A stretch of 64,000 nucleotides of DNA from Takakia lepidozioides (taxonomy: Eukaryota; Plantae; Bryophyta): assembly GCA_030704615.1 (NCBI GenBank), contig CM060733.1, positions 18,910,001 through 18,974,000 on the forward strand. The letters are read 5' to 3'. Below, piece by piece: positions 161 through 62,910 of the stretch. Position numbers and translations under genes: made by a program. The notes below the pieces were generated by a model. That model worked only from the letters and a program-made list of their open reading frames with translations. It made no database searches and was not told where the DNA came from. How positions within the stretch are numbered: the first letter of the stretch is position 1; the number at the start of each line of letters is the position of its first letter.

Positions 161-685
<525 letters not shown>

Positions 686-10477: not shown

Positions 10478-11649
10478 TATTTATAAATTTTGTATCTTGC
10501 AAATGAATAACACGATACAGAAAACAAACTCACAAATACCAACACCATCCAAAACACCCGTAATCAGATAATTAATGGAATAAATGGTACACCAAAGGTT
10601 TTGCCAACGAAATAAATCAAAACAAATCAAGATTTTTGAAGATTATATGAAAGAAAATTGGATGACATTATTGTTGACAAGATCTCAGGTTGATTTATTT
10701 TGCTAGCAAAACTTTACGCGATCGTGCAATTGGTCATTATCCAATAGTTTCGTGGGCAAAACAAAATGAACTGTGACTACTTTTGCACTTTAGGGACTGC
10801 TACGAGTGACAACATCACATGATAGAAAACACAACAATTAATCATTGGGCACGATTTAAGGAATTAGCCTGACAAAAAATTCCCCAAGCCCCAGTTGCGT
10901 GGCTTGTGCTGACGTGAACGGACAGTTTGAAAAGTTTTAGGTTGAGAACATTTTCATTTCGCATAAGTATCTTTCAGAAATATTCTTGGAATTTTTGGTA
11001 TATCCTCTTGTGCGTCACATGCCAACCAACCTCTAAATGTAGCATTCATTTTACTAATATGACACACGATAAGTCTTGCTAATAAAAATAATGATTGATA
11101 GTTATTTTATTTTATTTTATTTTTAGTTGTTTGTCTTCTACAAGAGCTTGCAATTCAGATAGAACTGTTTTGAGTGCTTGAAAAGTCTTGCTATCCAAAG
11201 CCATTGAATGGTTGTCACTATGGTGAATGAAATAATAGATGGATGGATGGAATAACACATATCCAGGATCATTAAGTGAATGAGGGAGTAGAAATCATGT
11301 AGCATGTAACATATAACGGTTTTTTTTGTAAAATTTGTAAAAAGATTGAATAGCGGATAGAGCAAAATAACAAGTATAAGGTAACATTTGTCCAAATCTG
11401 ATTGTAGTTAATGCACCTCCATAACTAAAATAGAGTAGTTTGACATATTACATAGCCTGTTGGATAGCGTGAGCATACCACAATATTCACCGGGCATAAT
11501 CACCATTGTTGAAAATCACCAATTGAATCACAACATGGTAATATCATCCTATGTGGATCAGGGGTGATTGAATGGGGTGACTTTTATCACCAAAGAATTA
11601 TTTCTATATTTTACATATTAAATTATTAAAAATAAATATGCAATGTTTA

Positions 11650-13205
11650 TATTAGTACACGACAAAATTGGTTGTAGTTTTGTGAATTGTGTAACCAAGT
11701 GTATCCCTTTTTTCCATAGCGTGACAGGGCTGATTGATGTGGCCTTGCCCCACAAGAGCTTCCCGGTATTGCAGTTAAAGCTCCTCACAGCTGTAAGGCG
11801 GCTTCCTTATCGATACACATCCACGCGGCAAACATCGTTTTGGACAGTTGTCGCACCACCTCGCAAGTAGTTTTGTTTCCCCCACTCTCTCTCAGGGGGG
11901 CTAGCTTGATGTTCAATGATGGTGTTTGATGTCTGGGAAGAAATCACATGAACATAAATAATGATTTCCAAATAGTATGTTGATTATGGAGAATCGGTTA
12001 TCATTCTAGGTTTCTCCATTAGTTATGTTGTTCTTTAAGGACAGGGAGGGTCTGTGTGCAAAGAGAAGTTTGACGTTGGAGACATACTAAGAAGATTGTC
12101 AATTACTCGTTGAGCATGTAGCAAAAATCTCGACATTGGAGAATTTTGGGCTTGGTACCTACAAGCCAAGATGGACTGTATGCAGGAGCACGTCAGAGAC
12201 CGAGCATGGACCGGCCTCCTCCCAAACCATCTTCCGGATTTACACCATGCAAAAATCTGGCCAACAACTTCTTGTCAAATGTTGGTGGCGCCCACGCTGC
12301 ATTAGTGACAACTACAGCCCCCTGTTTCGGTCTATCCTTTTCCCTCTGCATGCTGTAGCGCTAACCTTGCCCTAAAACCAAACAAGCGTTTGGCAGGTCG
12401 TGCTAGTGTGTTAAGTGATAGTCATCGATCATGGAGATCACCAAAAGTAAGCTCCATATCCCTCTGGATCCTCAATGAATGTAAAGCCCAAAGCTCCATA
12501 TCTCCTCAAGATAAATGGCCTTCCATTTCTTCATATAGATATGACCTGCCGTAACCACATTCTCCGGCAACAAAGTCCAGTCATTGAACAAAGAAGCTTG
12601 TCTTCCTCCTTCTGACTCCCAACATATTAAAATCGCATTCCGCCTGTAGTTCGAGGATTGCTTTGAGGTGCCAGTAGGAAGGAATTGACACCTGGGGAAC
12701 ATGTCATGGGTCATCCTCATCGTGTCATGGGTCGTCTTCACATATCATACACAAGCTTCAGCTTTTGGTCCATATTGTCGTCCATCAACTTTGAAATATC
12801 TGCAAGATCCGGTTCAAACAATGAAATCAAACTTAGATTCACAAACAATGAAACAAAATAGTAACTACAAAGGAAAGTGAAAACATATTGAATTAAATCT
12901 CTAAATTATGGTGTGAACATACCTTTGGGTTGGACTGCCAGTTCTGGAACCACCACCTCCCTCTTCTCCTCTAGCAATCTTCGCTTGGCCCTGATAGCTA
13001 CCGTAAGGCCAATTTGCTCACCCACCAAAAGATCCAAGTGGTAATTTTCGATCATGGATTTGATTACAAAATCCACGTCCTCTTCTGTCATGTTGATTTG
13101 ATTCAACGTCCTCAATGTAAAGCCCACATGTGCCATGACTACCGCAGTTGACGGTTGGACCCTACAGTCCTCGAACAGCTCATCAAGATAAGTTAACATT
13201 GTCAT
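11650..13205 (-). pseudogene. LFY: LEAFY/FLORICAULA-derived locus: open SAM exon, disrupted DNA-binding domain
   Basis: Exon 13205-12923 LDELFEDCRVQPSTAVVMAHVGFTLRTL..MTEEDVDFVIKSMIENYHLDLLVGEQIGLTVAIRAKRRLLEE matches the LFY SAM domain. Exon 2 (12799-12088) holds DRPKQGAVVVT (~DRPREHPFIVT) and QCR/FLLHAQRVI (~QCREFLLQVQTI). Intron 12087-11933. Exon 3 holds CIDKEAALQL/RSF (~CLDEEASNALRRAF). Stops and frameshifts after the SAM exon. Confidence 0.8.
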
Positions 13206-15447
13206 GACTACTGGAACACAGAGAAGGTAAGACAGATTCATAGAAGCTCAATACACAATAACTCATTCCACGATGTAGCCATGACTAAGGTTTATTCCAC
13301 AATACCTTCAAATATCTGTGGTATAGCTATGAAACCCATACATGACTAAACTATGTACGTGCAGAGGTGCAGCCTAACATGAGGGCAAGAATGTAATGAA
13401 ATCTCACTATCTAGTAGAAAGTAGTCAATGCATAATGATCAAGACAAAAAAAATGTTACGGAAGCAAACCAGGCTTTTACTACCTAAAGAACCACAGTCT
13501 TTTGCGATGCACTGGTCTATCTACACATCGTAGAAACCCCGTCAGGATACATGCACTCCACCGTAGGCAACAGTAGGCCGTGATCGGGAAAAGCAGGCGA
13601 AACAGAAATTCAGAAGTCCTAAACACACTAGTGCCACGTAGAACTATGTGCTGTATTCTAACATCTCGGGAACAAACCCTCATGTAACTATTCTACTGTT
13701 TCATATATCTGTAACAGAATGTAGGTGCAGATTAAAGTCTGTTGCAGATACTCAAATCCACTGAATGTAGTTTCATTGCATCTAAACTATTTGTGTTGCA
13801 AACTTAAAACAAAAAAATATCACATATGAATCCAACAATGCACGAGTGCAATCACAATACAAGAAAAAACCGAGATCCCACACTACGTCAGTTGTTGCAA
13901 ATCATGAAGCCAAGTTCCAAATGAATTCTCGATGTGACGTCCCGTTAAATATACGTGAAATACGTGAAATGATTGAAGGCAGCTACGTGTATTTATTGCT
14001 AATCCATCATACCCCTTGTGTGACTCAAAATCGCAAGTGTCTTGCGGTGTTTCCAAAATGGACAACCAAGTTCCCTTCTATCTATCTTTGCAGGATTTGG
14101 AATTCAAACCACATATATGCTGATGGTATGTAGGCTGCACAATATGGGGGCCCAGCTTGCACACAAACGCACTCGCATCGCAAACACAGTGGCATAGTTC
14201 CAAATTCATCTGAGCTCAGTGCAAGGCTACATACTGCAATCAACTGCACATTTGTAGGATTCCTAAAAAACATCATTTTTGAAGTCGCCAAGCCTGCGGT
14301 CTACGAGTGCGATTTGCGAAAAATGGACTTTGCGATTTGTGATATGCGATTTGCGATTTGCACAAGTATTTGCTCTGAGTTGGTGAATCTCATCCATGCA
14401 TTATTCAAAGACATTTGCGACATCATGTACAATGTATTATTGCCCCTTTCATGAGCATGAGCCCCACTCCCAATTTTGTTCATTTCTTCAATTCATATAT
14501 GCAGTTTTCCTCGTGTGTATTTCTCCCTTGTGCGGGTTATTCTTGGGTTTGTTGGAAAATTGTTCTATTAGACAATGCAGCCATTGTAGGCTAGTACAAC
14601 TCCAGTGTTTCTCTCCATATGGACTCTTGTAAGAATGTGTTTGCAAGTGGAGGAAAAATGGTATCTGTGAGCGAAAATGGGCGTTGATATCATTGAGCTT
14701 TTGCAGTTTACATCGTATGCTACAAATCTCCATGTAAATGAGCTATGAGATTGTTTGAAACTTTAACAAATGATTGGTTGCAACCTTGGATACTACCACA
14801 CTTGTACTTGTTGGCTTTATTTAGCATTTGAAGGAATTCCCTCCACAACTAGAATATGGAGCTAAGGAAATATATCCTAGCCAGTGACTGAAGCTCAATC
14901 TAAGCAACTGGTAAGTTTGGTCACAGTTTGGTGAACTACAATTCAGACTTTGACCCTCTTATCCTTGTACCTAAAACAAAGGGTTTGCTTCTTCCCCAAC
15001 AGGGTTGTTTTATTTTCCACTAGTATCCTACTTGCGAAAACACTAGTAGAAGATGGCTCATCTCAAGAGGGACCAAATTATTCCTTGAAGCCCTCAATCT
15101 TCGGCTTTGCTCAAGTTTCTCAGGAGTAGGTAGGAAGATAATGTCCGGTCAAAATTTTAAAACCTTGATTTCGTAAATTACAGCAATTTTCCACCCAAGT
15201 GGTACTCATCTTGAACTCACCCACTGGGCGTTTAGGGGTTAATATAGCTAGTCAAGGACTTTTTTACTTCGTCAGGCTTCAAATTTGGTGAACGAGCTTT
15301 TGAGTTCCATGTCTTGGACACTAGAAAAGCATCTGAATTCTTATAAACAGGCCCTGGAATTCACCTGGAATTCCTATAATCAATCTCATCTCATTGTCAA
15401 ATAACGATGAGGACTCTCCTCTATCTACACATCCACCACTTTAGTGA

Positions 15448-16603: not shown

Positions 16604-16939
16604 TATGGTTTCTTGTAAGCACATGGTTCAATATCACTGGACAAAAGGGGAGGGCTCTTCCTTTCTGTGGAGAAAAATGTCTCAGATGATATGGTGTTGT
16701 TGGTAGTCTGTGTCTGAGACCCATGTATTCATGATAATAAAGTCCAACTCAGGGCCGGGTTGGAAATCACTCAGAATTACAGCACCAATAATCATTCTTG
16801 CTGGTAGTGCAGATGCTAAGTTGTTGAAGGTTGAATCAGTACCTGTAATTTTCCAATTTTTTTCTTGGTTCAAATGCTTGTTTATGCTTCTGATGACTGC
16901 TTGGATCTGCAACTGTGTAAGGGAGATACAATCCCAAGG

Positions 16940-17370
16940 AATGCAACAGAGGATGATCAAATTTCTCATTTTCTCATCTTCCATTACACTTGTATGGCAA
17001 ACCAAACTCAAATCCAATTTTCTGCAATTCAGGCATGCATTAGCATCCTCACAGTAATAAACTTCCACCGATAGGGACAGATGGCACATAGACTACTGCT
17101 TGATTGGAGCCATACAGGCAAGGGGAAAGTAACCGCAGTCATGAGCTGTAATGTTGAGCTCAATGGGCTGGGCATCGATGCATAGAAATGTCGAGGCATG
17201 GCTTGTGAGATTAAGGCATGCCGTGAAACATCCTTTGCATCTCGGAGCAATTGTCGTGCATGCCCTCTGACATCTTGGAAGCACCTCTTCGAACTTTTAC
17301 GGCTTAAGCGTTTGTTGACGGATGAGTAGCCATCACAACAGCCAATACTTCGTGTGCTGTGAAAAGCTGT
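16940..17370 (-). pseudogene. Possible relic of a SOQ1/NHLRC2-like C-terminal domain
   Basis: KRLSRKSS, then in another frame FLCIDAQPIELNI...KQ*SMCHLSLSVEVYYCEDANACL, resembling recalled SOQ1 KRLRKRAS...FVVDVEPENAV...CKVYYCKEDEVCL. Confidence 0.3.
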
Positions 17371-17761: not shown

Positions 17762-20080
17762 CTACCTTAATTCCGCTTTTCTGATAAGGACATAGATGGC
17801 AACACGAGTGCTTTGATAGTCGGGATGACAGTCTGTTTCCAGCACTCTTCCTAAAACAAAGTGCTTCAATGCGCATCTGAAGAAACACTCCAGTACTGCA
17901 TCTGCCATAAATGCATACCCAGAACATTGTGAATCCTCATTGCCTGTTTTGGTATCAAAGCCACATTTCTCACTCCTTGTATTGATATTTAAATCTCTGA
18001 CCTTGTACTGCAAGGTATTATGCGGTCTGTACATTGACTAATACTCATTTTAGAATTTGATTATTGCACTGCGCAAAACATGCTAACAACAAGTGTTCTG
18101 ATTCCAGGTTGCAATGGGATGTTAATACAAGACAACGTCACAGACAAACCAGACTTCATTCGGAACTTGAGAATCCTAAATTTGCTAGACACGCCTAAAA
18201 AAGGTCCACAAACCTCAGAACGCAAAAGGGGTGCTGACTATTCACAACACTAAATCTTAGGAAGTGAAAGTGATGAGCCTAAGAGCAAGTTATTCATCCA
18301 TTTTCCAAAAATCAGCACCTTCAAAATTTATGGCCATTTGAACAGGAAAAGGAAAGGAAGGCCAAAACAATGTACCATTGCGGAGCTCTCCTGCAAGTAA
18401 CACAGTAGTGTGGAAGCCACAAAGACCTTGTAGCGTGTCCAGGAGATGTGGCACAACCTCTTCACTGTAAACCACATCAGATGCCACCACTGCCAACCCC
18501 ATCACATCCACCCAAACTGTTACTTCGGATCTGCCTGAGGTAGCGCAGTAAGCAGCTGCATTAAATGTCTAAATTGTGCGTCTTTGGCGTCAATTAGTTC
18601 TTTAAGGGTGGCTAGCATTTAATGAGCTTGAGAGAACTATGATTGATACGTAACTGACAGTTTCAACTCAATAAAATGTCAATCGAGATGATCTAGAGCA
18701 AAACCAACAAGGTGAACTTCAGAGTGAAAAACACACACATTGGTGGATATCAATAAGCAAAAAAAGGCAATCCTCCCAAGACTGTTAAAACAAAGACAAG
18801 AACGAACCAAAATCTGGAAGAGGCTCTACAAAGTCCTTGTCAAGGTTATCGCCCCATGTTAGCTCCCGCACACATGCGCTACCGCACCTTGACAAAGAGC
18901 GTATGTTTTCGTCTACGTTCTTTTGAAGTAACCGTAAGCGATCCGGTAGATCAGTCAATATCACATGTGCCCCTAGCAATGCAGCCACACACCTGATCCA
19001 TCCCCACTCTTTCCAAGGTCAATAAGAACAAGAGTTTTTTAGTTAACTAGTCACCTAACTTTCAACATCTGAAATGCAAAGTTTCCCTCAATCGGAAGTT
19101 GAAACTATCAAGTCTAAAAAGGACAACTGCCTTTGACAAGATGTGTTACTGCCAATCCCATGGGTGTTGCTACCAGCAAACTGAACAACACGCAATATTG
19201 GTCAAAGGATTCCTATGGAGATATGAGTAGAAGCTGTATAGTCCACATCTCCCTGTAGCATTACAGCCCACACTCTTTGCAAAATAGTCCACACATTCAA
19301 TTTTCACTTCTGATACTGCTGCGACAATCTCAATCCACCCAGAGTACAAGAGAGGGGATAAAAAGTACCCTACAAGACCACATCCGGCTCCCAATTCGAT
19401 GCATTTTTTGCCTTGTATTTTCAAACCATGTTTGTCTGCTGCATGCTCCAGAATCTTGGCTAAAACAACTCCACTGTCCCACATAACTCCACCAGTAACC
19501 CCTGGCGTGGCCTGTTCATCGTGCAAGGCCAGATCTCACCACAGCCTCCCATCTCTCAAAGTCTTCCCATTTACTGAAATTTCCCAACCCAAATGTCGTA
19601 GGCCTGGATTGCATTTGATTCCATGTAATGAGGATATAGAGGATATATGAAAACCCACAGACAAAGAAGCTACTTACATGCCTCCGTCATACTGCTGAAC
19701 TTTATCTAACTTTCCATGACCCCTTGACGATCCAATTTACACCATACTAAGATCCAATTGATATGAAACACATGTACAGGTTCTAAAAAACCCACATACC
19801 ATCATCCCAGCTGCAAATTGGGAGTTTGGAAAAGGAGGGAACAAACCAAAGATGATGGAGACTGCATGATGTCAAGCTGCTGGCCACATGCATCCAGGTG
19901 CAAATGCACCGATGTGTGAAGCACAAACGCATTCTGGCGAGCTGAAGTGGGTTGTCGGAAAGCCCACAGCAGCATAGTTTCTTCAGCTCCATCTTCGACC
20001 AAGCGCACGGGTGCCTGAAACGCACCCAATTGCACCATCACCCCATCCCCATCATCCTCACGCTCAATTTCTTCGGCCAT
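17762..20080 (-). CDS. METTL21-like protein N-lysine methyltransferase (At1g73320-like), 5 exons
   Basis: Exons 20080-19847, 19511-19369, 18992-18808, 18489-18376, 17901-17762. Motifs TPGVTGGVMWDSG, ELGAGCG, LTDLP, ELTWG, ASDVVY. Confidence 0.9.
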
Positions 20081-20348: not shown

Positions 20349-21264
20349 ATGGGTCATGCAGCAGTGTGGAACTCTCATCCCAAAAAGTTCGGGCCTGGTT
20401 CTCGCACCTGGTATGATCTCTTTGTTTCTCTTTCTCCCCTTCCCCCACCCCATCTCTATCCCTCTCTCTCCGGTTGCTTGTGTACCCATCTTGTGCAGTG
20501 AAATGCTGGTATTGTTTTGATGAATGGCCTCATGTGACTGCTACTTGTCAAGGAGAATCTGCTAGGGAAACATCGGTGTGGCTTTACTTCGATTTTCCCT
20601 TTTAAGTTTTGGAATCTGAAGATTGAGCTATAAGGCGTCATATGGGTTTCCCGTTAGGACATTGAACTCATGTATATTGAACCTGCCGTGGCCTCTGTTG
20701 AGGTACGTGTTTATTAGCTTGGTTCTCCGACTATCGCTTAAGCTAGTGTTTCCTGCGCGGACCTGGAAATAATTGGTTCTTGACTAAGTAGACTTTAGAG
20801 CCAATTAGCTGGTGCGCATGTGCGAGTGTGTCTCTCATATTGGATTTGATTCTGAGACTTGTGCTGGGGCCTGGCCGTGCAGCCGGGTGTGCGGGAATGG
20901 CCATGGCCTGATCCGCAAGTATGGTATCAACACATGCCGGCAGTGTTTTCGCATCTACTCCAAGGACATCGGCTTTGTGAAGGTATCTTGCCCCACTTCT
21001 CTCTCGGGTTTTCGACACTGCACAATGAGTGTCTGTCTGAAAACTGCACCCCATACATGTTCTCTACTTCTGTACATTAAGAGGCAATACAGAATTTCGA
21101 ATTAGACTGCGAGTTTTGTGAACTTACATATCACCGTTCTTTCCTGCTCCATGAAGGCGTTTGTGCGCACTTATGTCAAGGTCAGACAGAAGGAAGCTAT
21201 ATGTCGATGTCTGAACCCTGTCTAATTGTTTCTGGTGCTGCTGATGTCTTTACAGTACCGGTAA
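20349..21264 (+). CDS. RPS29: 40S ribosomal protein S29 (uS14), 3 exons, 56 aa
   Basis: Exons 20349-20410, 20883-20982, 21256-21264: [56 protein letters not shown]. Confidence 0.95.
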
Positions 21265-22392: not shown

Positions 22393-24718
22393 TCAAGTTG
22401 TGACAGTCCTCTCAACAAGGAAAACGTTGCCCTTGTCATCTCGACCCACTCTGAGCATCTCATCCACATATCTAAGCTGAAGTTAAGGTTGTGCGTAGAC
22501 ATTCATAGAGCCCATCTATTTACCATGACACCAAAACAGTAAGATGAAGGATACGTGATTTCCAGCCAGCCTTCTGGATTAAAGATACTCAAGAGCACAT
22601 CGTAGTTCTTCCGAAACAAGCTCAGCAGCTGTTCCACCATGGCAATTTCATGGATTAGCATAGGAAAAACCAAGCTATCTTTCTCTAAATGGCAAAAGAT
22701 ATGGAGAGACCTACCTGTTCTGGTACGATGGATGACTTCTCGAAGTGTATATTGACACGCTGCACTCACACCCAACATGAGTAAGAGACTTGCCTCACAC
22801 CCATATGACATACACAGTCACTCTTCCTAGTTACATTGCACAGAACTTGTATGCAAAGCCACCTCAGATATTCAAGCAACACCCTAGGGGAAAATTCTAG
22901 TTAAGTCTGTGATTTCAGCATGAACTTCTACTCTGAGAATTAGTACGAACCGTAGGGGAAGCAATGGTGTAAGAAGCTTCAATTGTGAAAGAGCCTGTAA
23001 GCGCGCGAAGTCCCACCACACTAAACCCAACTTTGTTCACAGCCGTCTTCTGCTCTTAGGAGGTTCAAAGCGATAGTCAACACTTGGCAGATTCTTGTGG
23101 ATTACAGTCAAGACAAAAGGCCTTTATTCTAAATGCAATTGTCTGACTGGCTCAACAACCAGAACAATAACGACAAACAACACCTCTAGAACAAATTACC
23201 AGGCTCAGATAAGCCATTTCTATGCACAGAGACACAACAGAGTGAAGGAAGGGCCCCGAGGAGAGGAGAACCATGAACTAACCTGATCGACATCAATGAC
23301 TTGCAAAAAGTCCTCCAATTTGATGAAATCCCTCAGCCCCAACTTTGTCCTCTTGGAACCCAATATAGAAATGGTGCTATACAGAAGTTTCCACTCACCT
23401 TTCACCTGGAACACTTTCGCTGGTCAAGCTTCATTCACCATCTTTTCCACAACTACATAATACAAAAAGTTACAAAGACACCAAATTGCAAAGACTTACA
23501 ACTCCTACTTGTCAGTCAAATGTGATAGAAGCACAGATAGCAAGCTGCCTGTTGCTACCTTGTCCAAATTATCAGTGGGCCTAGGATATGGATTTGACGC
23601 CTCAAGCAGCTGGAGCAGCCTCTCCACTTCAGCCTTGTGTGCTGCCTGGACCCCAAAGATGCCCCTGTTCAAGCCTGCACACATCAAGTATCACCACTTC
23701 AGCGCTGACTCAGCAACCACCTCAACAGCACGGCCTGCCTTTGGGACCTGCTGTAACCACTAGTGGATCTTACCAAACTCAAGCTCTGGGGTGTAGAGCA
23801 GTCCCCAGCAGGATATAACTATCCGCTACATGCAGAGGGCAGGGGAGACATAAAAGAGAGAGAGACGTTGGGAGGTAGTTTGAGGAAGAGGACAAGTTTG
23901 CAAACATTCTAAGTCTTACTTGCATAACCCTCACAATACCACTCACCTCTTGGAGCCAACAACCAGCTAACACCATGCTCATCAAGCTTTACCACCCCAT
24001 GTTGCAAACCACCGGAAGGAATTCCTTAGAAATGATGCTGCAAGTTGGAATTGTACTGACTTCTGTCAGACAATGATTCATGTTTCAAAGGCTGGACGGA
24101 GAATAAGAAATTGAGCCAGAAGTAGCTCCAAATGCATTGAACTGTGGCTTCCATATTTGTTGCCAACAATCTGCTCATCGGCTGTCTATATGATGGTTTC
24201 TATTGCTTACACATGTACTGGCTTGATATATAGAATTTCATATCTCAAGTCAGGTATGCTTTAACTGCGTTGTGGATTCTCTGCTTATCCCACGACCTGC
24301 ATTTGAGCATTCGATAGTCATTCTGAACAAAGGTTTGTGAGGCTACTACACCTTCAACAGCCGCCAGCAATGCGCCTTTCACGTCATCAATGCCTGCAAA
24401 CTCTCTGCTGCTACTCTCAAGGTTGGCTGCCTGAACAGCCCCCTGCATGGTCAGTGAGCTCTCTGAATCGCTGAGCCCATTGCATATCCACCTTCGAAAT
24501 CCTCTCCAGCTCAGCTCCTTTCTTACAGAAAATGCAGAGTCCTTGAACCTGCATCGCTCACCTAGCCGTATTCCATAATGTCGTAGTCCCCCATACACTC
24601 TCCTTCCTGTCGGAAACTCATTGATGTGCTTATGAATATCTTGATGGAAACTTCGACTCCTTTGTATCCATAAAGAGCTAAACGGGCGAGCCAAAGCCAG
24701 TGAGAAGGAGGTCGCCAT
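22393..24718 (-). CDS. FBN5: Plastid fibrillin FBN5, 7 exons
   Basis: Exons 24718-24352, 23674-23559, 23405-23283, 23049-22951, 22759-22715, 22628-22555, 22471-22393. Motifs [59 protein letters not shown]. Confidence 0.9.
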
Positions 24719-36905: not shown

Positions 36906-38063
36906 GTTAATTTTTTCCCCCTCCTCAAGTGCCTGAATTGTGGGCTGTCACCCCCAGGTTTCCTTTTTATTTTATTTTATTTTTTAAATTACCTAGTTCG
37001 GAATCAGTTTTTTATTTTTCCGAAGATACCATTATAATTGTTTAGTTAATTACAAAACCGAAACCACTGATATTTTCCAACAAATGACTGTGACCAGAAC
37101 CATCCTGATGTTCGAAGAACCCAAACCAAAAGTGGGAGGCGGAGGTTCTTTAAATAAGCAACAAGCACCCAACAACCTTGGCCTGGGTCGGGAAGATGAC
37201 TGCCATCTTTCCAGATCTGCTCTTTCAAACCATTATTTCCACTGTCCAAAATCCAACACAGTATACATTTGACTGACAAAGCCAATGCTAGGATTGGGCA
37301 ATTTGAATCACCTAATATCCTGCTTGCCTGCACCAGGCATTTCTCTGATAAACAAGACACCTCTTGCATGGAGGCCTGGGAGGAAAGGGTCCTTTTGTCC
37401 GGTTGTCCACTGACGGGTGGATGATGGAAAAGAGATGGTCCTGGACTTCTGAGTGTAACTAAGAGGTCTACATGAAAGCACATAATGCCACGAAAACATT
37501 GTTTCAGTTTCTTGCCTGTCCACCCTGTTAAGATAAGAGCACTGCCTTATCATACAAATATCGTATTAATTGAACAAGACGTGAACTTTCTAAGTAAAGC
37601 TACTGGTTTTTTGGCAGTTTCCCCGGTAAGTACCTGCATCACCCTCAAGACAATGACTCAGGTGTTGAATCTCCCTTTGTGGCAAGTGATGGTCAAATCA
37701 GATGCGAGTACTTCACACATTGCATGTGTAATTACACTCACATCAAAATTTGCTTGAAGAGAAAGGTGCAAAGGCCATGGGTGATGGAAATGGGACCGAC
37801 TGTATGCTTGCATACATACTTGAAGAATTGAATCACCCCCAAGAACTATTAGGATACATGGTAGAGCCAGACAGAGGACAAGCTCCCAAATTCCAGCCGA
37901 AAAGGATGATTCTACAAGCTCCCGACAACACTGCTATCTTTCCAAACTACCAACATATGGATCTAGCATCATGCAGCAAATCGTATCCAATTTCAATCAT
38001 GAGATTCCAAACCATACAATAAGAACACATCACTCCATAATTAGATTATGGATGTTCACCAGA

Positions 38064-43626: not shown

Positions 43627-44082
43627 CGCACGCAAGCTTCAGGAATCCCAAGCTTCAGGAATCCCTGACAATTGCTCGCAGATCGTGAGCCGAGTGACGA
43701 GAGTCCTGCTCCGCACACGCATCCCCAAGCCTATATCGCATCTTCCCCACCTTCCGGGTCCGCGCACCCGCATTGCACCGGCCCGCTGTCGTCCTAGGGC
43801 AGCCTTGGAAAATTTTCCCAACACCAGCGTTGAAATTTGGCGATCTGCCCGTTGATTTTGGCACTGTGGGATAGAAAAACAAGTTTGGGCAATACTAAAA
43901 GGACCAATGGCAAGCCCCCTTCCAGGATGATGGGTCACCTCCACAAGTTTGGATGGTGGTAACAAGTAACAACCTCATCTTTTTCTACTATCTTGAAGGG
44001 TGAAATAGTATTTATAAGGAACTCCCCATAGCCACCCCTCACAAAACAGGGCCCTTAATTCTAGTGAAGAGGTGCCAAGTCT

Positions 44083-44181
44083 AAGGGAAGGGGGAGAAGA
44101 TGATACACACCCGACAAAGTAGTAGGATTTGAGCCCAGAATCACCTGGGTGGCACTTAGTGCTGTATCCAACTGAGCTACC
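44083..44181 (-). mobile_element. tRNA-derived SINE head
   Basis: TAGCTCAGTTGG...GGCTCAAATCC on the minus strand; homologous to 4170-4263. Confidence 0.6.
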
Positions 44182-49598: not shown

Positions 49599-52500
49599 TG
49601 TCACGGATATAGCCCAAAGGAACTTACTACGCATAAATACCAAAAGTTACTAAATTACCATGTTACCAAAAGTTACCGTGATCTACCATGATTTACCATT
49701 AGTTACCAAGTTACCGGGAGTTTATCAAATTATCAGGAGTAACTTGGGAAACTGCTCAGGAAGTTTCCTTGGAAGAAACTCTCCATCAAGATACCTCTTT
49801 TGTTTAAAGAAACTTCTCCATCAAGAAACCTCATAGTAGCCAATATATATAGGAGGCGAGGTTGGACACCCTTCAGTCTCGCCAACACCAGTTCAAACTA
49901 TTCTTGTTTTCAGTTCCCAGTACTTTAGCCCAGTTTCCAGTATCTGGTACTCCAGTCCAGTTTCTAGCATTCTAATATTCAAGTCGTATTCCAATATCTT
50001 GTACTCTTGTTCATTGTTATAAAGATCATCTTGATTCTTATTTACTCATCGTGCATTCGGCTACGCCGACTTGGACTTCTTGTCTAGTCTTGTACCTCTA
50101 GTCTGATCTCTTGTTTGTGTTCAATCATGTTCTCGTCCTTGACAGTTTGGCGAGACTAAAGTTTGTTCCTTAGTTAGTTAAGATGGAATTGACAAAGACT
50201 TTGCGAAGCAACACAATTTAACGCTCTTAAGAAAGAAATTATCGGCCCCTGTTGAAGTCATCGATGAACGACCGTTAGCATCAGGAAATATTGACCATGA
50301 AACTCGAATACAATGTTATGTCTTTCGGTCTTACAAATGCTCCAGCAATTTTTCAACACATGATGAATGACATATTTCGAGAATTTTTAGATGACTTTAT
50401 AATCATCTATTTGGACAATATTTTGACATTTTCACATAATGAAGAAGAAAATGATCGTCATGTACGCCTTGTCCTTGATAAATTGAGGGAAAAAAAGACT
50501 ATATGTCAAGTTGGAAAAATATCTTTTCCTCAATCTGAAGTCGAATTTTTGGGCTACATTATTTCCGACAAATGAGTCTTTATGGATCAGAAGAAAATAC
50601 AAACAATCATCGAGTGAATTAAACCAACTTCGGTCCGAGATGTACAATGTTTTCTAGGATTTGCAAATTTCTATAGAATCTTTATCAATGACTACTCCAA
50701 AATTGTTGCACCATTGACACGACACAGGGAAGGAAAAATTTATATAAGACGAGAAGGCTGACCAAACATTTAAAAAGCTGAAGCAAGCATTTACAACAGC
50801 TCCAATATTGGTACATGCAGACCCATCTAAACCATTATTTTTAGAAGCAGATGCATCGGACTTTGCACTTGGCGCGGTACTCTCCCAATACGGTACAGAT
50901 GGCCAACTTCACCTTGTTGGTTCTCGTTCTCGCAAATTTTCCGCTACGGAGATCAATTATGAAATCCATGAGAAAGAACTTCTAGCGATTATCGATGTTT
51001 TTGAGGAGTGACGTCATCTATTGGAGGGAGCTAAACATCAGGTCATTATCTATACCGATCACAAAAACCTCGAGTATTTTATGAGTGCTCGTGTTTTGAA
51101 TCGACGTAAAGCCAGATGGGGTATGTTACTAGCAAGATTTAATTTTGTTATTATCTATCGCCCCAGACATCTTCAAGGGAAACCCGATGCTCTTTCTCGA
51201 CGATCATATCTTGCGCCGAAACAAGGGGAGACAGCTTTCGACCAACAAAAATCCATCATCTTGAAACCAACAAATCTCCAATTGAATATGTTATCCATGT
51301 CCACCTATGACGATGCAGAGATCATAAAGGAGATTCAGGAAGCACTGAAGAGCGACCAATTTGCTACGACACTACGCAGTCAACTAAATCGACCTCGAGA
51401 TAACCCACAAGTTAAAAACGACTTCGAATTCAAAGATGATTTACTTTATTTCAAGGGAATTCTTTATGTACCTCCAGGACCTACACGACTTCGAATTCTT
51501 CAAACATATCATGATCTTCCGGCTGCATGACATTTCGGCTTCAACAACACATTTCATTCCATGTAATAAGACGGTTACCGGCGAAGAAATTGCAATACTC
51601 TTCCTCAATAATATCTACCGCATTCATGAACTCTTGAAGGACATCGTATCTGATCGAGGACCACAGTTCATATTAAATTTTTGGAGGGGATTATTTCACA
51701 TATTGGATACTAAGATCAACCTCTCTACAGCAAATCATCCACAGACTGATGATCAAACCGAACGTGTAAACTAGATTTTGGAGCAGTATCTTCGCTGTAC
51801 AATAAATTATCATCAAGACAATTGGACGGACCTTCTGTCATTGGCTGAGTTTGCCTACAACAACTCTATGCATTCTTCGACCAAACAAACTCCATTTTTC
51901 TCCAATTATGGTCATCATTCTTGAGCAAACCCTTTCCACATGAAGACTGTTGAAAGTCATGCTGCAGAAAACCTTGTTACGATTCACAAGGAGCTTACAT
52001 TCCACTTCGTAGAAACTCAAAAACAATACAAGGAGTATGCAGATAAACGTCGTCAACTCCAACCCCAGTTCAAGGTCGGAGATCGTGTGTGGCTTCTTCG
52101 ACGGGATATACAAACCTCGCGACCATCAAGGAAATTGGATTACCAACGTCTGGGACCATTCAAACTTATTCGACAAAATAAATCCGGTCAGTTTTCGGCT
52201 TGAACTCCCACAAAGTATGCACATCCATCCAGTCTTTCATGTTTCATTGTATCATCCATCGAATATTCTAGGGAGAGTCTCCGTACCACCTCCACCAATC
52301 GAAGTCAATCAGGAAATTGAGTATGAAGTCGACGAAGTCCTAGAGTCTCGCATCAAGTATAAATGTCTTGAGTATTTCGTATATTGAAAAGGCTACGACA
52401 TCAGCGAACGAACGTGGGAACCTTCATCCAACCTCGCCAATGCATCTGACAAAGTCCAAGAGTTTCATCAACGATATCCAGCTAAGCCCTGAGCTCCACG

Positions 52501-61203: not shown

Positions 61204-62910
61204 ATGGGTGGCGCAGCGATCTCAACCGCGAAGATGACTTCATTTCTGGTGGCCTTGCTGCTGGCTTCCACATCGGGTAGGCCTGGATTCCTTGATATAC
61301 TACGGTATCAGCAATCTAGCATCCTTCACTCGGTATTTGACATCGTACTGAGCAGTTGGAGCTTGATCTACTACTATTGTAGAGTCAATTATGTAAGACG
61401 GTTTTCGGAACTTTACATCAGAGTAATCCATTTCTTTGACGTCGGAATACTAAGTCCACTGAGTGCCTGGGGAAAGACGGTACTGTACTAACTGAAGTCT
61501 GATGCGATAGCCATTTCCTCCAAGTTGTGAAGGGGTCTTATTTGGCTGGATAGCGAGAGAATCTCTCATAGCCCGGTGGTTGTGGAACGTCTCGAGTCTC
61601 CTCGTGCAAGTGGTTAAAGTCTGTCTGCCCCCTCGCTCTTTCTGGGCACTAATATCTGAGCTTCTTCCCAGCATTCGATAAACAGGTGGGAAGCAAGTTC
61701 CCACTGTAATTGAACATCCTTTGACAGGCCACTCGTGAGCAATTCCGAAACTTTCAATGCGAGATGGTGAACTGTCAAACATCACAAGAAGATATGAAAG
61801 TCTGACTGAGTGTGGATGGGATTTTCTGAATGTTGGAACTGGCCTGACAGGCGTCTCAGCAACTACCTTCACCTTCCTCAATGCATGTGCATTCACTGTG
61901 TGGGTGGGAACACAACCCAATGGGGGTCTCCCTCTTCTAGCTGCTGGCGGATTCGCACTGGCTCCTGGTCAAACAAGTGCTGTGGGGGCACAGCCTGGCT
62001 GGGGAGGACGATTCTGGGGCCGCACTCTTTGCAACTTTGGAGCAACTGGTTGTATGACAGGAGATTGCGGGGGAGTTCTGGAGTGTGGTGGTGCAGGAGG
62101 AAATCCCCCTGCTACATTGGCTGAGTTCACTCTTAATGGAGCAAACGGTGATGATTTTTACGACATTAGCTTAGTCGATGGCTACAACTTACCTCTCAGT
62201 ATAACACCCAGTGGAGGAAGTGGCATGTGTGGTTCTCCTGGTTGCACTAGCAATCTCAATACCCGGTGTCCAAGCGGGTTGGAGGTGTGTCTGCCCTGTA
62301 CTTTCTCTTATTGATATTCCAAGGTTGAAGGGGGACTGGGTGGTGAGAGTTGCATTCCTTCATGGCATTGCATGGCACCTCATTGTGCTTCAGACAAAAT
62401 CCCTACTGCATTGTCAAATATTGTCAATGGTAGCTCTAAGGTGCATAGTGTCAGATTGAGGCAATAGTACTTCTACAGAGATCTACCTAAGTTATCCCAC
62501 AAGGGGATGTTCTTCCACCCACAGCTATCTGGTTTGACAGTTGTCTTCAGAAGAAGCCCAAGGATTGTTGATTGTTCCCCTCAAGTTGGATTCCTATCTA
62601 AATCTCTAGATGGACTTTGAATGTTTGCTGTGTAGCAATTCCAAGGTGCCAATTATTCTGTTTATTTGTGCAGGTTAAAGCTGGTGGCCAGGTGGTAGCC
62701 TGCAAGAGTGCCTGCAGTGCTTATGGTTCATCACAGTATTGCTGTACGGGACCAAACAGCACACCTTCTACCTGTCCCCCCAACCAATATTCACGTGTTT
62801 TCAAAGCAGCTTGCCCTACTGCATACAGCTATGCCTATGACGATGCGAGCAGCACTTTCACCTGCTCAGGGGCCAATTATGCCATAACCTTTTGCCCAAA
62901 TGGTACCTAA
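61204..62910 (+). CDS. Thaumatin-like protein (PR-5), 3 exons, 247 aa
   Basis: Exons 61204-61276, 61851-62284, 62674-62910. Signal peptide, [48 protein letters not shown]. Confidence 0.95.

What the first reader, a model, noticed from the sequence alone, without database searches (positions are those of the whole stretch)
11650..13205. LEAFY-derived locus that could encode a SAM-only microProtein
Seen: a 94-codon open exon with LFY SAM residues (LFE, GFT, M..E..D, DLLVGE, AIRA.RR). A canonical GT-AG splice (intron 12922-12800) gives a 114-aa product ending KLVYDM* at 12738. Downstream, DBD motifs remain in LFY's exon order but are broken by stops and frameshifts. Known: LFY is usually single- or low-copy, and its SAM domain drives oligomerisation. 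Inference: asymmetric decay suggests either a retained SAM-only modulator or dominant-negative of LFY, or a fossil of LFY duplicate loss.
Basis: partly seen in the sequence, partly recalled or inferred. Interest (0 to 1): 0.85.

Follow-up and report, generated by a model that had tools for sequence, protein, structure and literature searches.

The report
Stray LEAFY SAM-domain gene fragment, moss
A moss genome carries a stray partial copy of the developmental regulator gene LEAFY that still reads as an open oligomerisation (SAM) domain. It changes at a rate not told apart from unconstrained DNA and has no RNA support, so it is most likely an ordinary gene-fragment pseudogene rather than a new regulator.

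Summary
The core observation holds. Minus-strand ORF 13241-12909 encodes a real LEAFY SAM domain (Pfam SAM_LFY, E 2e-20; the predicted fold matches PDB 4UDE).

The claimed DNA-binding-domain relics are not there. Five methods found none. One of them, a frameshift-tolerant alignment, did find a different relic: a second, badly decayed partial SAM copy at 12521-12412. Part of the supposed relic zone (11747-12210) has another copy elsewhere in the genome.

The closest relatives are intact three-exon type-II moss LFY genes (82% nucleotide identity, 70% amino-acid identity). These genes evolve at omega about 0.02. The window copy's branch has omega 0.43-0.52, or 0.96 by a conservative count. That is far above background (p about 1e-8) and not different from 1.

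An open frame this size survives by chance with probability about 0.15-0.3. Two probable RNA runs show no contig on it.

Verdict: a DNA-level partial duplicate of LFY exon 1, probably non-functional. A SAM-only microProtein is not excluded, but nothing supports it.

The scan also noted LEAFY-type SAM domains at two other places in this genome. I did not check those notes.

The parts
12909..13241 (-). Open reading frame of 111 codons. ATG at 13241, further in-frame ATGs at 13205 and 13199, in-frame stop upstream at 13250-13248, TAA stop at 12908-12906.
12957..13187 (-). Copy 1: the LFY SAM-domain coding homology (ORF residues 19-95). It is 82% nucleotide and 70-72% amino-acid identical to the type-II moss LFY on L006.
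   Evidence: Pfam SAM_LFY E 2.1e-20; tblastn; blastn 81% over 225 nt, E 5e-54; AF2 model matches 4UDE with TM 0.88
13098..13103 (-). In-frame 6-nt insertion (Asn-Gln) inside the mid-loop surface, between T75 and E83 (Arabidopsis LFY numbering). None of the 16 other LFY SAM domains compared, from algae to angiosperms, has it.
12914..12923 (-). End of exon 1 (phase 1) and donor G|GTATGTTCA, identical to the intron-1 donor of the intact LFY on L006. This is the last demonstrable LFY homology.
12800..12922 (-). Its length is like LFY intron 1 of L006 (119 nt), but homology of the core is not significant, and the splice is unverified.
   Evidence: 84 of 500 shuffles reach the observed score; no RNA
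12738..12799 (-). No homology to LFY exon 2 or to any Pfam family.
12412..12521 (-). Relic 2: a decayed partial copy of the SAM exon (QPST..GFT..EEYHL) with at least 3 frameshifts and in-frame stops. It may run on to about 12330.
   Evidence: DNA local alignment, 0 of 300 shuffles reach it; direct repeat D2; frameshift-aware protein alignment scores 52 against a null maximum of 37, 0/300 and 0/328; alignment A2
11747..12210 (.). It has another copy elsewhere in the genome at about 82% identity and has no LFY homology.
   Evidence: read laying, run X1, record 4 and the joint 11800>11885; no LFY hits
13402..13700 (.). Multi-copy repeat just upstream of the ORF. This is the only place in the stretch where the probable RNA runs gave a contig, and that contig is under 90% alike, so it comes from another copy.
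   Evidence: summed depth up to 916 against about 75; X5 and X6 contigs at 13534-13699 with 13 changed letters and 9 gaps

Best explanation
This is a DNA-level partial duplicate of a type-II moss LEAFY gene. About 0.3 kb was copied, running from the first codon of the SAM domain (L-K/D-E-L-F) to the intron-1 donor. It sits in a repeat-rich intergenic stretch, about 4.5 kb downstream of a lysine-methyltransferase gene on the same strand.

A second partial copy of the same exon lies about 0.65 kb further downstream and is already broken by frameshifts and stops.

The first copy has lost the very strong constraint that holds real LFY SAM domains. It has 21 amino-acid replacements, three of them at positions at least 90% conserved among the other 16 LFY proteins compared (two of these invariant), plus a 2-residue insertion in the oligomerisation surface. 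Its reading frame is still open because the piece is short and only moderately diverged.

Shown here: its identity, its extent, the lack of DBD exons, the relaxed rate, and the absence of contigs in the available probable RNA runs. Inferred: that it is not expressed and has no function, and the way it was duplicated. The duplication was not retroposition, because the exon-intron junction is kept. Ectopic repair or capture by a mobile element are both possible.
For: Identity and extent.

No DBD by five methods. The frameshift-aware method did detect relic 2, so it has the power to find a decayed relic.

The relatives L001, L006, L007 and L009 carry intact genes with SAM_LFY followed by two C_LFY_FLO ORFs.

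Codon branch model: background omega is 0.024 and the window branch is 0.43-0.52. Omega_fg = omega_bg is rejected at p 1.4e-8. Omega_fg = 1 is not rejected (p 0.06 and 0.30).

Changes specific to the window copy are 19 nonsynonymous to 6 synonymous codons, NG86 ratio 0.96. The N:S ratio is no different from the neutral expectation, and P(no stop by chance) is 0.16-0.26 for 111 codons.

The replacements are no more conservative than random ones (p 0.28). They do not significantly avoid conserved columns (3 of 19 against 18 of 56, p 0.24).

The probable RNA runs X5 and X6 have no contig on 11400-13533. No SAM-only orthologue with the copy's derived features is in the protein collections.
Against: The frame is open over 111 codons. 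The only clear indel in the aligned core is in frame, and the shorter exon-1 tail also keeps the frame.

Four of the five named interface residues (T72, T75, R112, R116) are kept and E83 became D. The donor site is intact and an AG acceptor gives an in-frame continuation.

The point estimate of omega (about 0.45) is below 1, and under one topology p = 0.06.

Copy 1 is far less decayed than relic 2 beside it. That could mean constraint on copy 1, or simply that relic 2 is older.

The RNA sample is thin: two small runs that are RNA only by a guess, kept as contigs. Moss LFY itself is expressed in few cells.

First-reader notes report LFY-type SAM domains joined to other genes elsewhere in this genome, so the domain may have a life outside LFY here.
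Confidence: 0.68

Rival explanations
1. SAM-only microProtein. The ORF is transcribed and yields a 111-aa protein (unspliced) or a 114-aa protein that is little more than an LFY-type SAM domain. This protein joins the head-to-tail LFY oligomer through one or both surfaces and caps or dilutes it, lowering LFY's cooperative DNA binding.
For: The ORF is open and the SAM fold is complete and predicted with moderate confidence (pLDDT 72, core 79-86; TM 0.88 to 4UDE). T72, T75, R112 and R116 are kept (residues as named in PMC4844672). Either splicing outcome gives a SAM-only product. The omega point estimate is below 1. Copy 1 is far better kept than relic 2.
Against: Neutrality is not rejected by any of five tests. 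The otherwise invariant K108 became T, E83 became D, and the near-invariant G57 became R. A unique 2-residue insertion lies in the mid-loop surface. There is no RNA contig and no orthologue in the databases. The upstream sequence is a repeat with no recognisable promoter evidence.
Confidence: 0.1
2. Exon of a larger chimeric gene. The SAM piece has been recruited, by exon shuffling, into a transcript with other exons. A pyrimidine tract followed by AG lies at about 13212, just upstream of the homology, and would give a phase-1 entry. This would parallel the trihelix-SAM and SAM-F-box/kelch arrangements noted elsewhere in this genome.
For: The sequence ...cttaccttctctgtgttccag| lies directly before the domain, and a conserved donor follows it. 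First-reader notes s1-460420 and s1-476759 report such fusions in the same genome; they are unchecked.
Against: No Pfam domain or long conserved ORF lies on the minus strand between 13250 and 17700 or between 9000 and 12900. The upstream methyltransferase gene appears, from my reading of its last ORF piece, to end near 17765. There is no RNA support, and the rate is near neutral.
Confidence: 0.1
3. A whole LFY duplicate landed here, the SAM exon was kept by selection, and the DBD exons decayed in place beyond recognition.
For: The order of features is exon 1, donor, a possible intron of LFY-like length (123 against 119 nt), then an AG acceptor. A permissive chained alignment of exon 3 gave a marginal score, reached by 2 of 100 shuffles and 4 of 94 other segments.
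Against: Copy 1 differs from L006 by only 16-18% at the nucleotide level while evolving near neutrally. DBD exons of the same age should therefore be about 80% identical to L006's and easy to find, yet nothing was found. The method finds the much more decayed relic 2. The marginal exon-3 path is a chain of 3- to 11-residue scraps, and it crosses 11885-12210, a segment with a paralogue elsewhere that is not LFY. Strict settings give scores at the null mean.
Confidence: 0.07

Closest known systems
LEAFY/FLORICAULA N-terminal SAM oligomerisation domain (Pfam PF01698; Ginkgo LFY-SAM structure 4UDE; Sayou et al. 2016, PMC4844672)
   Same: Clear sequence membership (72.9 bits). The predicted five-helix fold superposes on 4UDE at 1.5 A. 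T72, T75, R112 and R116 are kept. The nearest relatives are type-II moss LFY genes, with D312 and C345 read off the L006 exon-3 translation; the residue-to-type rule is from my own knowledge.
   Different: It stands alone, with no C_LFY_FLO DNA-binding domain. It has a 2-residue insertion in the mid-loop surface. K108 became T, E83 became D and G57 became R. Its omega is 20-40 times higher than in real LFY genes.
Duplicate-gene fragments and unprocessed partial pseudogenes, including fragments carried by Pack-MULE or Helitron-type elements in plants (general knowledge, not tested against a library)
   Same: It is a short (about 0.3 kb) piece of one exon plus the first bases of the intron, set among repeats, with a second broken copy beside it, a near-neutral rate and no transcript evidence.
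   Different: No terminal inverted repeats, target-site duplication or Helitron ends were found around it. The piece itself is single-copy at 80% or more in the DNA run.
Plant trans-microProteins such as LITTLE ZIPPER and miP1a/b (reviews PMC9638782, PMC5381583)
   Same: On paper it has the right architecture: a protein under 20 kDa made only of the interaction domain of a larger transcription factor, encoded at a separate locus.
   Different: Known microProteins are expressed, conserved and shown to bind their targets, and none of that is shown here. The 2022 review does not mention LFY.

Membership tests
SAM_LFY domain (PF01698) | Profile match above Pfam's gathering score | tested here: met
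   72.9 bits against a cut-off of 25.2, E 2.1e-20, profile positions 3-79 of 80
SAM_LFY domain (PF01698) | Five-helix SAM fold like Ginkgo LFY-SAM | tested here: met
   AF2 model with pLDDT 72 and helices at 9-22, 30-38, 43-48, 53-66 and 73-96. Foldseek to 4ude_A: TM 0.88, rmsd 1.5 A. This is a prediction only.
SAM_LFY domain (PF01698) | Mid-loop and end-helix contact residues T72, T75, E83, R112, R116 (PMC4844672) | tested here: inconclusive
   T72, T75, R112 and R116 are identical and E83 became D, but a unique Asn-Gln insertion lies between T75 and E83
SAM_LFY domain (PF01698) | Forms head-to-tail oligomers | not testable with these tools
   Complex prediction gave no verdict. It needs SEC-MALLS or yeast two-hybrid.
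LEAFY/FLORICAULA transcription factor gene | C-terminal DNA-binding domain (PF17538) downstream of the SAM domain | tested here: not met
   No hit by Pfam, tblastn, a local HMM, blastn/nhmmer or frameshift-aware alignment
LEAFY/FLORICAULA transcription factor gene | Three-exon structure with conserved intron positions | tested here: not met
   Only the exon-1 donor is conserved. Homology of exon 2 and of the intron core is not significant. The relatives have all three exons.
LEAFY/FLORICAULA transcription factor gene | Strong purifying selection | tested here: not met
   Background omega is 0.024 and this branch is 0.43-0.52, or 0.96 by the conservative count
microProtein (trans type) | Small single-domain ORF related to the interaction domain of a larger regulator | tested here: met
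   A 111-aa ORF (or the 114-aa spliced model), SAM domain only
microProtein (trans type) | Transcribed and translated | tested here: inconclusive
   No contig on the ORF in two probable RNA runs of the species. The runs are small, kept as contigs, and RNA only by a guess.
microProtein (trans type) | Binds the parent factor | tested here: inconclusive
   Complex prediction gave no verdict, so it counts neither for nor against
microProtein (trans type) | Kept by selection, or conserved in relatives | tested here: not met
   Neutrality is not rejected. No like copy is in the public protein collections, though the species' own assembly seems not to be in them.
Processed (retro) pseudogene | Lacks introns and intron borders | tested here: not met
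   The exon-1/intron-1 junction and 9 intron bases are kept
Gene fragment captured by a DNA transposon (Pack-MULE or Helitron type) | Terminal repeats or typical ends around the fragment, and other copies of the carrier | tested here: inconclusive
   No flanking inverted repeat of 14 nt or more that brackets the piece sensibly. The flanks are repeated in the genome, but the SAM piece is single-copy at 80% or more.

The most novel reading that the evidence does not exclude
In this moss the LEAFY SAM exon has escaped its gene and is being reused. This locus would encode an expressed SAM-only protein that plugs into LFY oligomers, and sister copies elsewhere in the genome would be joined to a trihelix DNA-binding domain and to an F-box/kelch protein. 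That would be the first LFY-derived microProtein and the first case of the LFY SAM domain outside LFY.
Probability: 0.08. Interest if true: 0.75.

Novelty: new member of a known kind. Interest (0 to 1): 0.22.

Why it matters
LFY is famous for staying single- or low-copy, and its SAM domain is known only inside LFY. A SAM-only product kept by selection would be a new layer of control over a master developmental regulator.

The evidence here points the other way. This is a young, partial, nearly neutrally evolving fragment. It is useful mainly as a datable record of LFY duplication and loss in mosses, and as a warning that the 'DBD relics' seen by eye were not real.

The one thread worth pulling is genome-wide. 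Three or four separate notes of LFY-type SAM domains in one genome would be unusual if they hold up.

Tried and rejected
1. Complex prediction with the L006 LFY SAM domain (P0035 residues 15-100) against the window ORF (residues 13-111) gave no verdict. The score was 0.01 and the controls were not run. It is no evidence either way.

2. Weak tblastn hits of SAM regions at 16805-17065, 24377-24586, 37259-37543 and 43903-44181 were not supported by the local SAM HMM. Pfam also found nothing for 16685-17092. I treat all four as chance.

3. Frameshift-aware alignment of the DBD. Three full-length DBDs scored within the null. L006 exon 2 scored at the null mean. Exon 3 was marginal only under permissive chaining, along an incoherent path. 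Rejected.

5. I looked for terminal repeats or tandem structure around the fragment and for RNA families. Nothing useful was found.

6. A third protein search, with the Psilotum LFY SAM region, to look for SAM fusions found only the query itself.

7. The species could not be named. The best thaumatin hits are Physcomitrium, Sphagnum and Ceratodon at about 70%, which says only that it is a moss not in the named collections.

8. The species' own intact LFY could not be retrieved with these tools. All rate estimates therefore use LFY genes of related mosses from metagenome and Logan contigs.

9. Its two exons were searched apart by reference.

Full report
WHAT IS THERE

On the minus strand the frame is open from 13247 to 12909. 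In-frame ATG codons lie at 13241, 13205 and 13199, and the stop is TAA at 12908-12906. Its translation matches Pfam SAM_LFY at 72.9 bits (cut-off 25.2, E 2.1e-20) over nearly the whole profile. It matches a local LFY-SAM HMM at 2.6e-27, and it is the only such match in the 64 kb. It also matches the Ginkgo LFY-SAM crystal structure 4UDE at 1.3e-14.

An AlphaFold2 model built on alignment A1 has five helices, pLDDT 72 (core 79-86), and superposes on 4UDE at TM 0.88 and 1.5 A.

The exon ends in phase 1 at 12923. GT lies at 12922-12921 and AG at 12801-12800. The reading continues for 20 codons to TGA at 12738.

WHERE IT COMES FROM

An exhaustive HMMER search found only 30 related cluster representatives. 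All are LFY proteins or LFY exon-1 fragments, apart from one spurious LapA-domain match (P0028). None of the 20 scanned against Pfam carries another domain beside SAM_LFY and C_LFY_FLO.

The closest relatives (P0035, P0036, P0037, P0001) lie on metagenome or Logan contigs. Each of these contigs carries a SAM_LFY ORF followed by one or two C_LFY_FLO ORFs; on L001, L006, L007 and L009 these form an intact three-exon LFY gene. Their DNA-binding exons read KMRDY and GAWCQAC. By my own knowledge of the LFY literature, D312 and C345 mark the type-II class found in mosses.

A thaumatin gene in the window hits moss proteins best, at about 70%. The genome is therefore a moss that is absent from the named collections.

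At the DNA level copy 1 is 81% identical to L006 over 225 nt (E 5e-54) and 72% identical to L001. Homology begins abruptly at the first SAM codon, near 13187. It runs through the exon-1 donor, where G|GTATGTTCA is identical to L006. Beyond the donor, neither the intron core nor exon 2 shows significant similarity. Because the exon-intron border is kept, this is not a retrocopy.

THE CLAIMED DBD RELICS

I looked for them in five ways:
- Pfam on every ORF piece.
- tblastn with 34 LFY proteins, several full length, against the window.
- A DBD HMM built from 15 sequences, run against all 2152 stop-to-stop pieces.
- blastn (word size 7) and nhmmer with the whole L006 and L001 genes.
- A frameshift- and jump-tolerant dynamic-programming alignment, with shuffled DNA and other window segments as nulls.

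None gave a signal in 10500-12900. One permissive setting reached 65 for exon 3, against a null of 48-50 (sd 7). Two of 100 shuffles and 4 of 94 other segments matched that score. The path is a chain of 3- to 11-residue scraps.

The method has power. With the SAM protein as query it found a different relic at 12521-12412, scoring 52 against a null maximum of 37 (0/300 shuffles, 0/328 other segments).

That relic 2 is a second partial copy of the SAM exon, reading RPFILRRYGALGFTF / SLRI / QRDMELTF / LVISMIDDYHL, with at least three frameshifts. The DNA evidence agrees.

The intact LFY genes of related mosses do not match that segment.

Copy 1 differs from L006 by only 16-18%. DBD exons duplicated with it should still be about 80% identical to L006's and would be easy to find. 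They were either never copied or have been deleted.

IS COPY 1 UNDER SELECTION?

- Among the intact moss LFY genes the SAM exon is almost frozen. Pairwise dN/dS is 0.00-0.04, and L006 and L009 have identical proteins at dS 0.39.
- Copy 1 against L006 gives dN 0.149, dS 0.445.
- A two-ratio codon model that I wrote (GY94-type, F3x4, 6 sequences, 75 codons) gives background omega 0.024 and window-branch omega 0.43 or 0.52, under two topologies. Equal omegas are rejected at p 1.4e-8. Omega = 1 is not rejected (p 0.058 and 0.30).
- I also counted only states seen in no functional LFY. This count undercounts synonymous changes. It gives 19 nonsynonymous and 6 synonymous codons, ratio 0.96.
- The N:S split does not differ from the neutral expectation (p 1.0 and 0.08). 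With 27-45 random substitutions per 225 nt, a frame of 111 codons stays free of stops with probability 0.14-0.26.
- The replacements are no more conservative than random ones (mean BLOSUM62 0.05 against -0.19, p 0.28).
- The replacements do not significantly avoid the 19 columns conserved in at least 90% of the other 16 LFYs (3 of 19 changed against 18 of 56, p 0.24).
- The three conserved positions hit are G57 (to R), the interface residue E83 (to D) and K108 (to T). The last two are invariant in the other 16 sequences. A unique Asn-Gln insertion (13103-13098) sits in the mid-loop surface between T75 and E83.

Against this, T72, T75, R112 and R116 are kept, the indels are in frame, and copy 1 is much better preserved than relic 2.

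Relic 2 shares synonymous states with copy 1 (GGC, TTT, TTG). It keeps the LFY state at several sites where copy 1 has nonsynonymous changes. The simplest reading is that the shared states belong to the species' own LFY, and that copy 1's amino-acid changes came after it was copied. If so, the true post-duplication omega is higher than 0.45. Relic 2's greater decay may reflect greater age rather than constraint on copy 1. The data cannot separate these two readings.

EXPRESSION

The index search found the stretch only in four DNA runs of one sample, which may be the source of the assembly. It found none of its words in two probable RNA runs of the same species label.

I laid those runs on 11400-13700 at 80% likeness. 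That gave no contig on the ORF, the putative intron, the second exon or relic 2. The only contig, under 90% alike, lies at 13534-13699 and belongs to another copy of an upstream repeat. The runs are small, kept as contigs, and 'RNA' is a guess, so this is weak negative evidence.

CONTEXT

Upstream on the same strand, Methyltransf_16 matches lie at 19535-18293, and from my reading of a further ORF piece the gene seems to end near 17765. A ribosomal protein S29 exon lies on the plus strand at 20809-21102. No Pfam domain or long ORF links the SAM exon to a neighbour. No terminal repeats bracket it.

VERDICT

The SAM exon is real and LFY-derived. The DBD relics are not supported. The locus is best read as a partial, unprocessed duplicate of LFY exon 1, with a second broken copy beside it, evolving at a rate not distinguishable from neutral.

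The microProtein idea remains possible, at about 0.1.

Other first-stage notes place LFY-type SAM domains next to a trihelix domain, an F-box/kelch protein and perhaps a Replitron-like element elsewhere in this genome. I could not read those loci. If they are real, the spread of this exon through the genome would be the more interesting story.

Noticed in passing
same genome, outside the window (notes s1-460420, s1-476759, s1-479681): First-stage notes report LEAFY-type SAM domains joined to a trihelix domain and to an F-box/kelch protein, and a 'SAM-domain gene' next to a Replitron HUH endonuclease. Together with this locus that makes three or four stray LFY-type SAM copies in one moss genome. 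This hints at repeated copying of that exon, perhaps by a mobile element.
   Followed up: no
window 12412-12521 (minus), perhaps to about 12330: A second, frameshifted partial copy of the LFY SAM exon lies about 0.65 kb downstream of the open one.
   Followed up: yes
window 13402-13700: A multi-copy repeat with summed contig depth up to about 916, against about 75 for single-copy DNA. Diverged copies appear in the two probable RNA runs. The element was not identified (no Rfam or Pfam match).
   Followed up: partly
window 11747-12210: A segment of about 460 nt with one other copy in the genome at about 82% identity, on a 4.35-kb contig at single-copy depth, with an 84-nt gap at 11800-11885. Its origin is unknown.
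   Followed up: partly
window 17765-19535 (minus) and 20809-21102 (plus): A multi-exon Methyltransf_16 (protein-lysine methyltransferase) gene and a ribosomal protein S29 exon. Both look like ordinary neighbours.
   Followed up: partly
window 200-685 (plus), 61757-62314 (plus), 51021-51530 (plus): A GAPDH C-terminal domain exon, a thaumatin-family exon (best hits are moss proteins at about 70%), and a reverse-transcriptase RNase H fragment.
   Followed up: partly
L006:16720-18066: The 222-kb contig carrying the closest intact LFY also has a MULE transposase ORF about 6 kb downstream of the gene.
   Followed up: no
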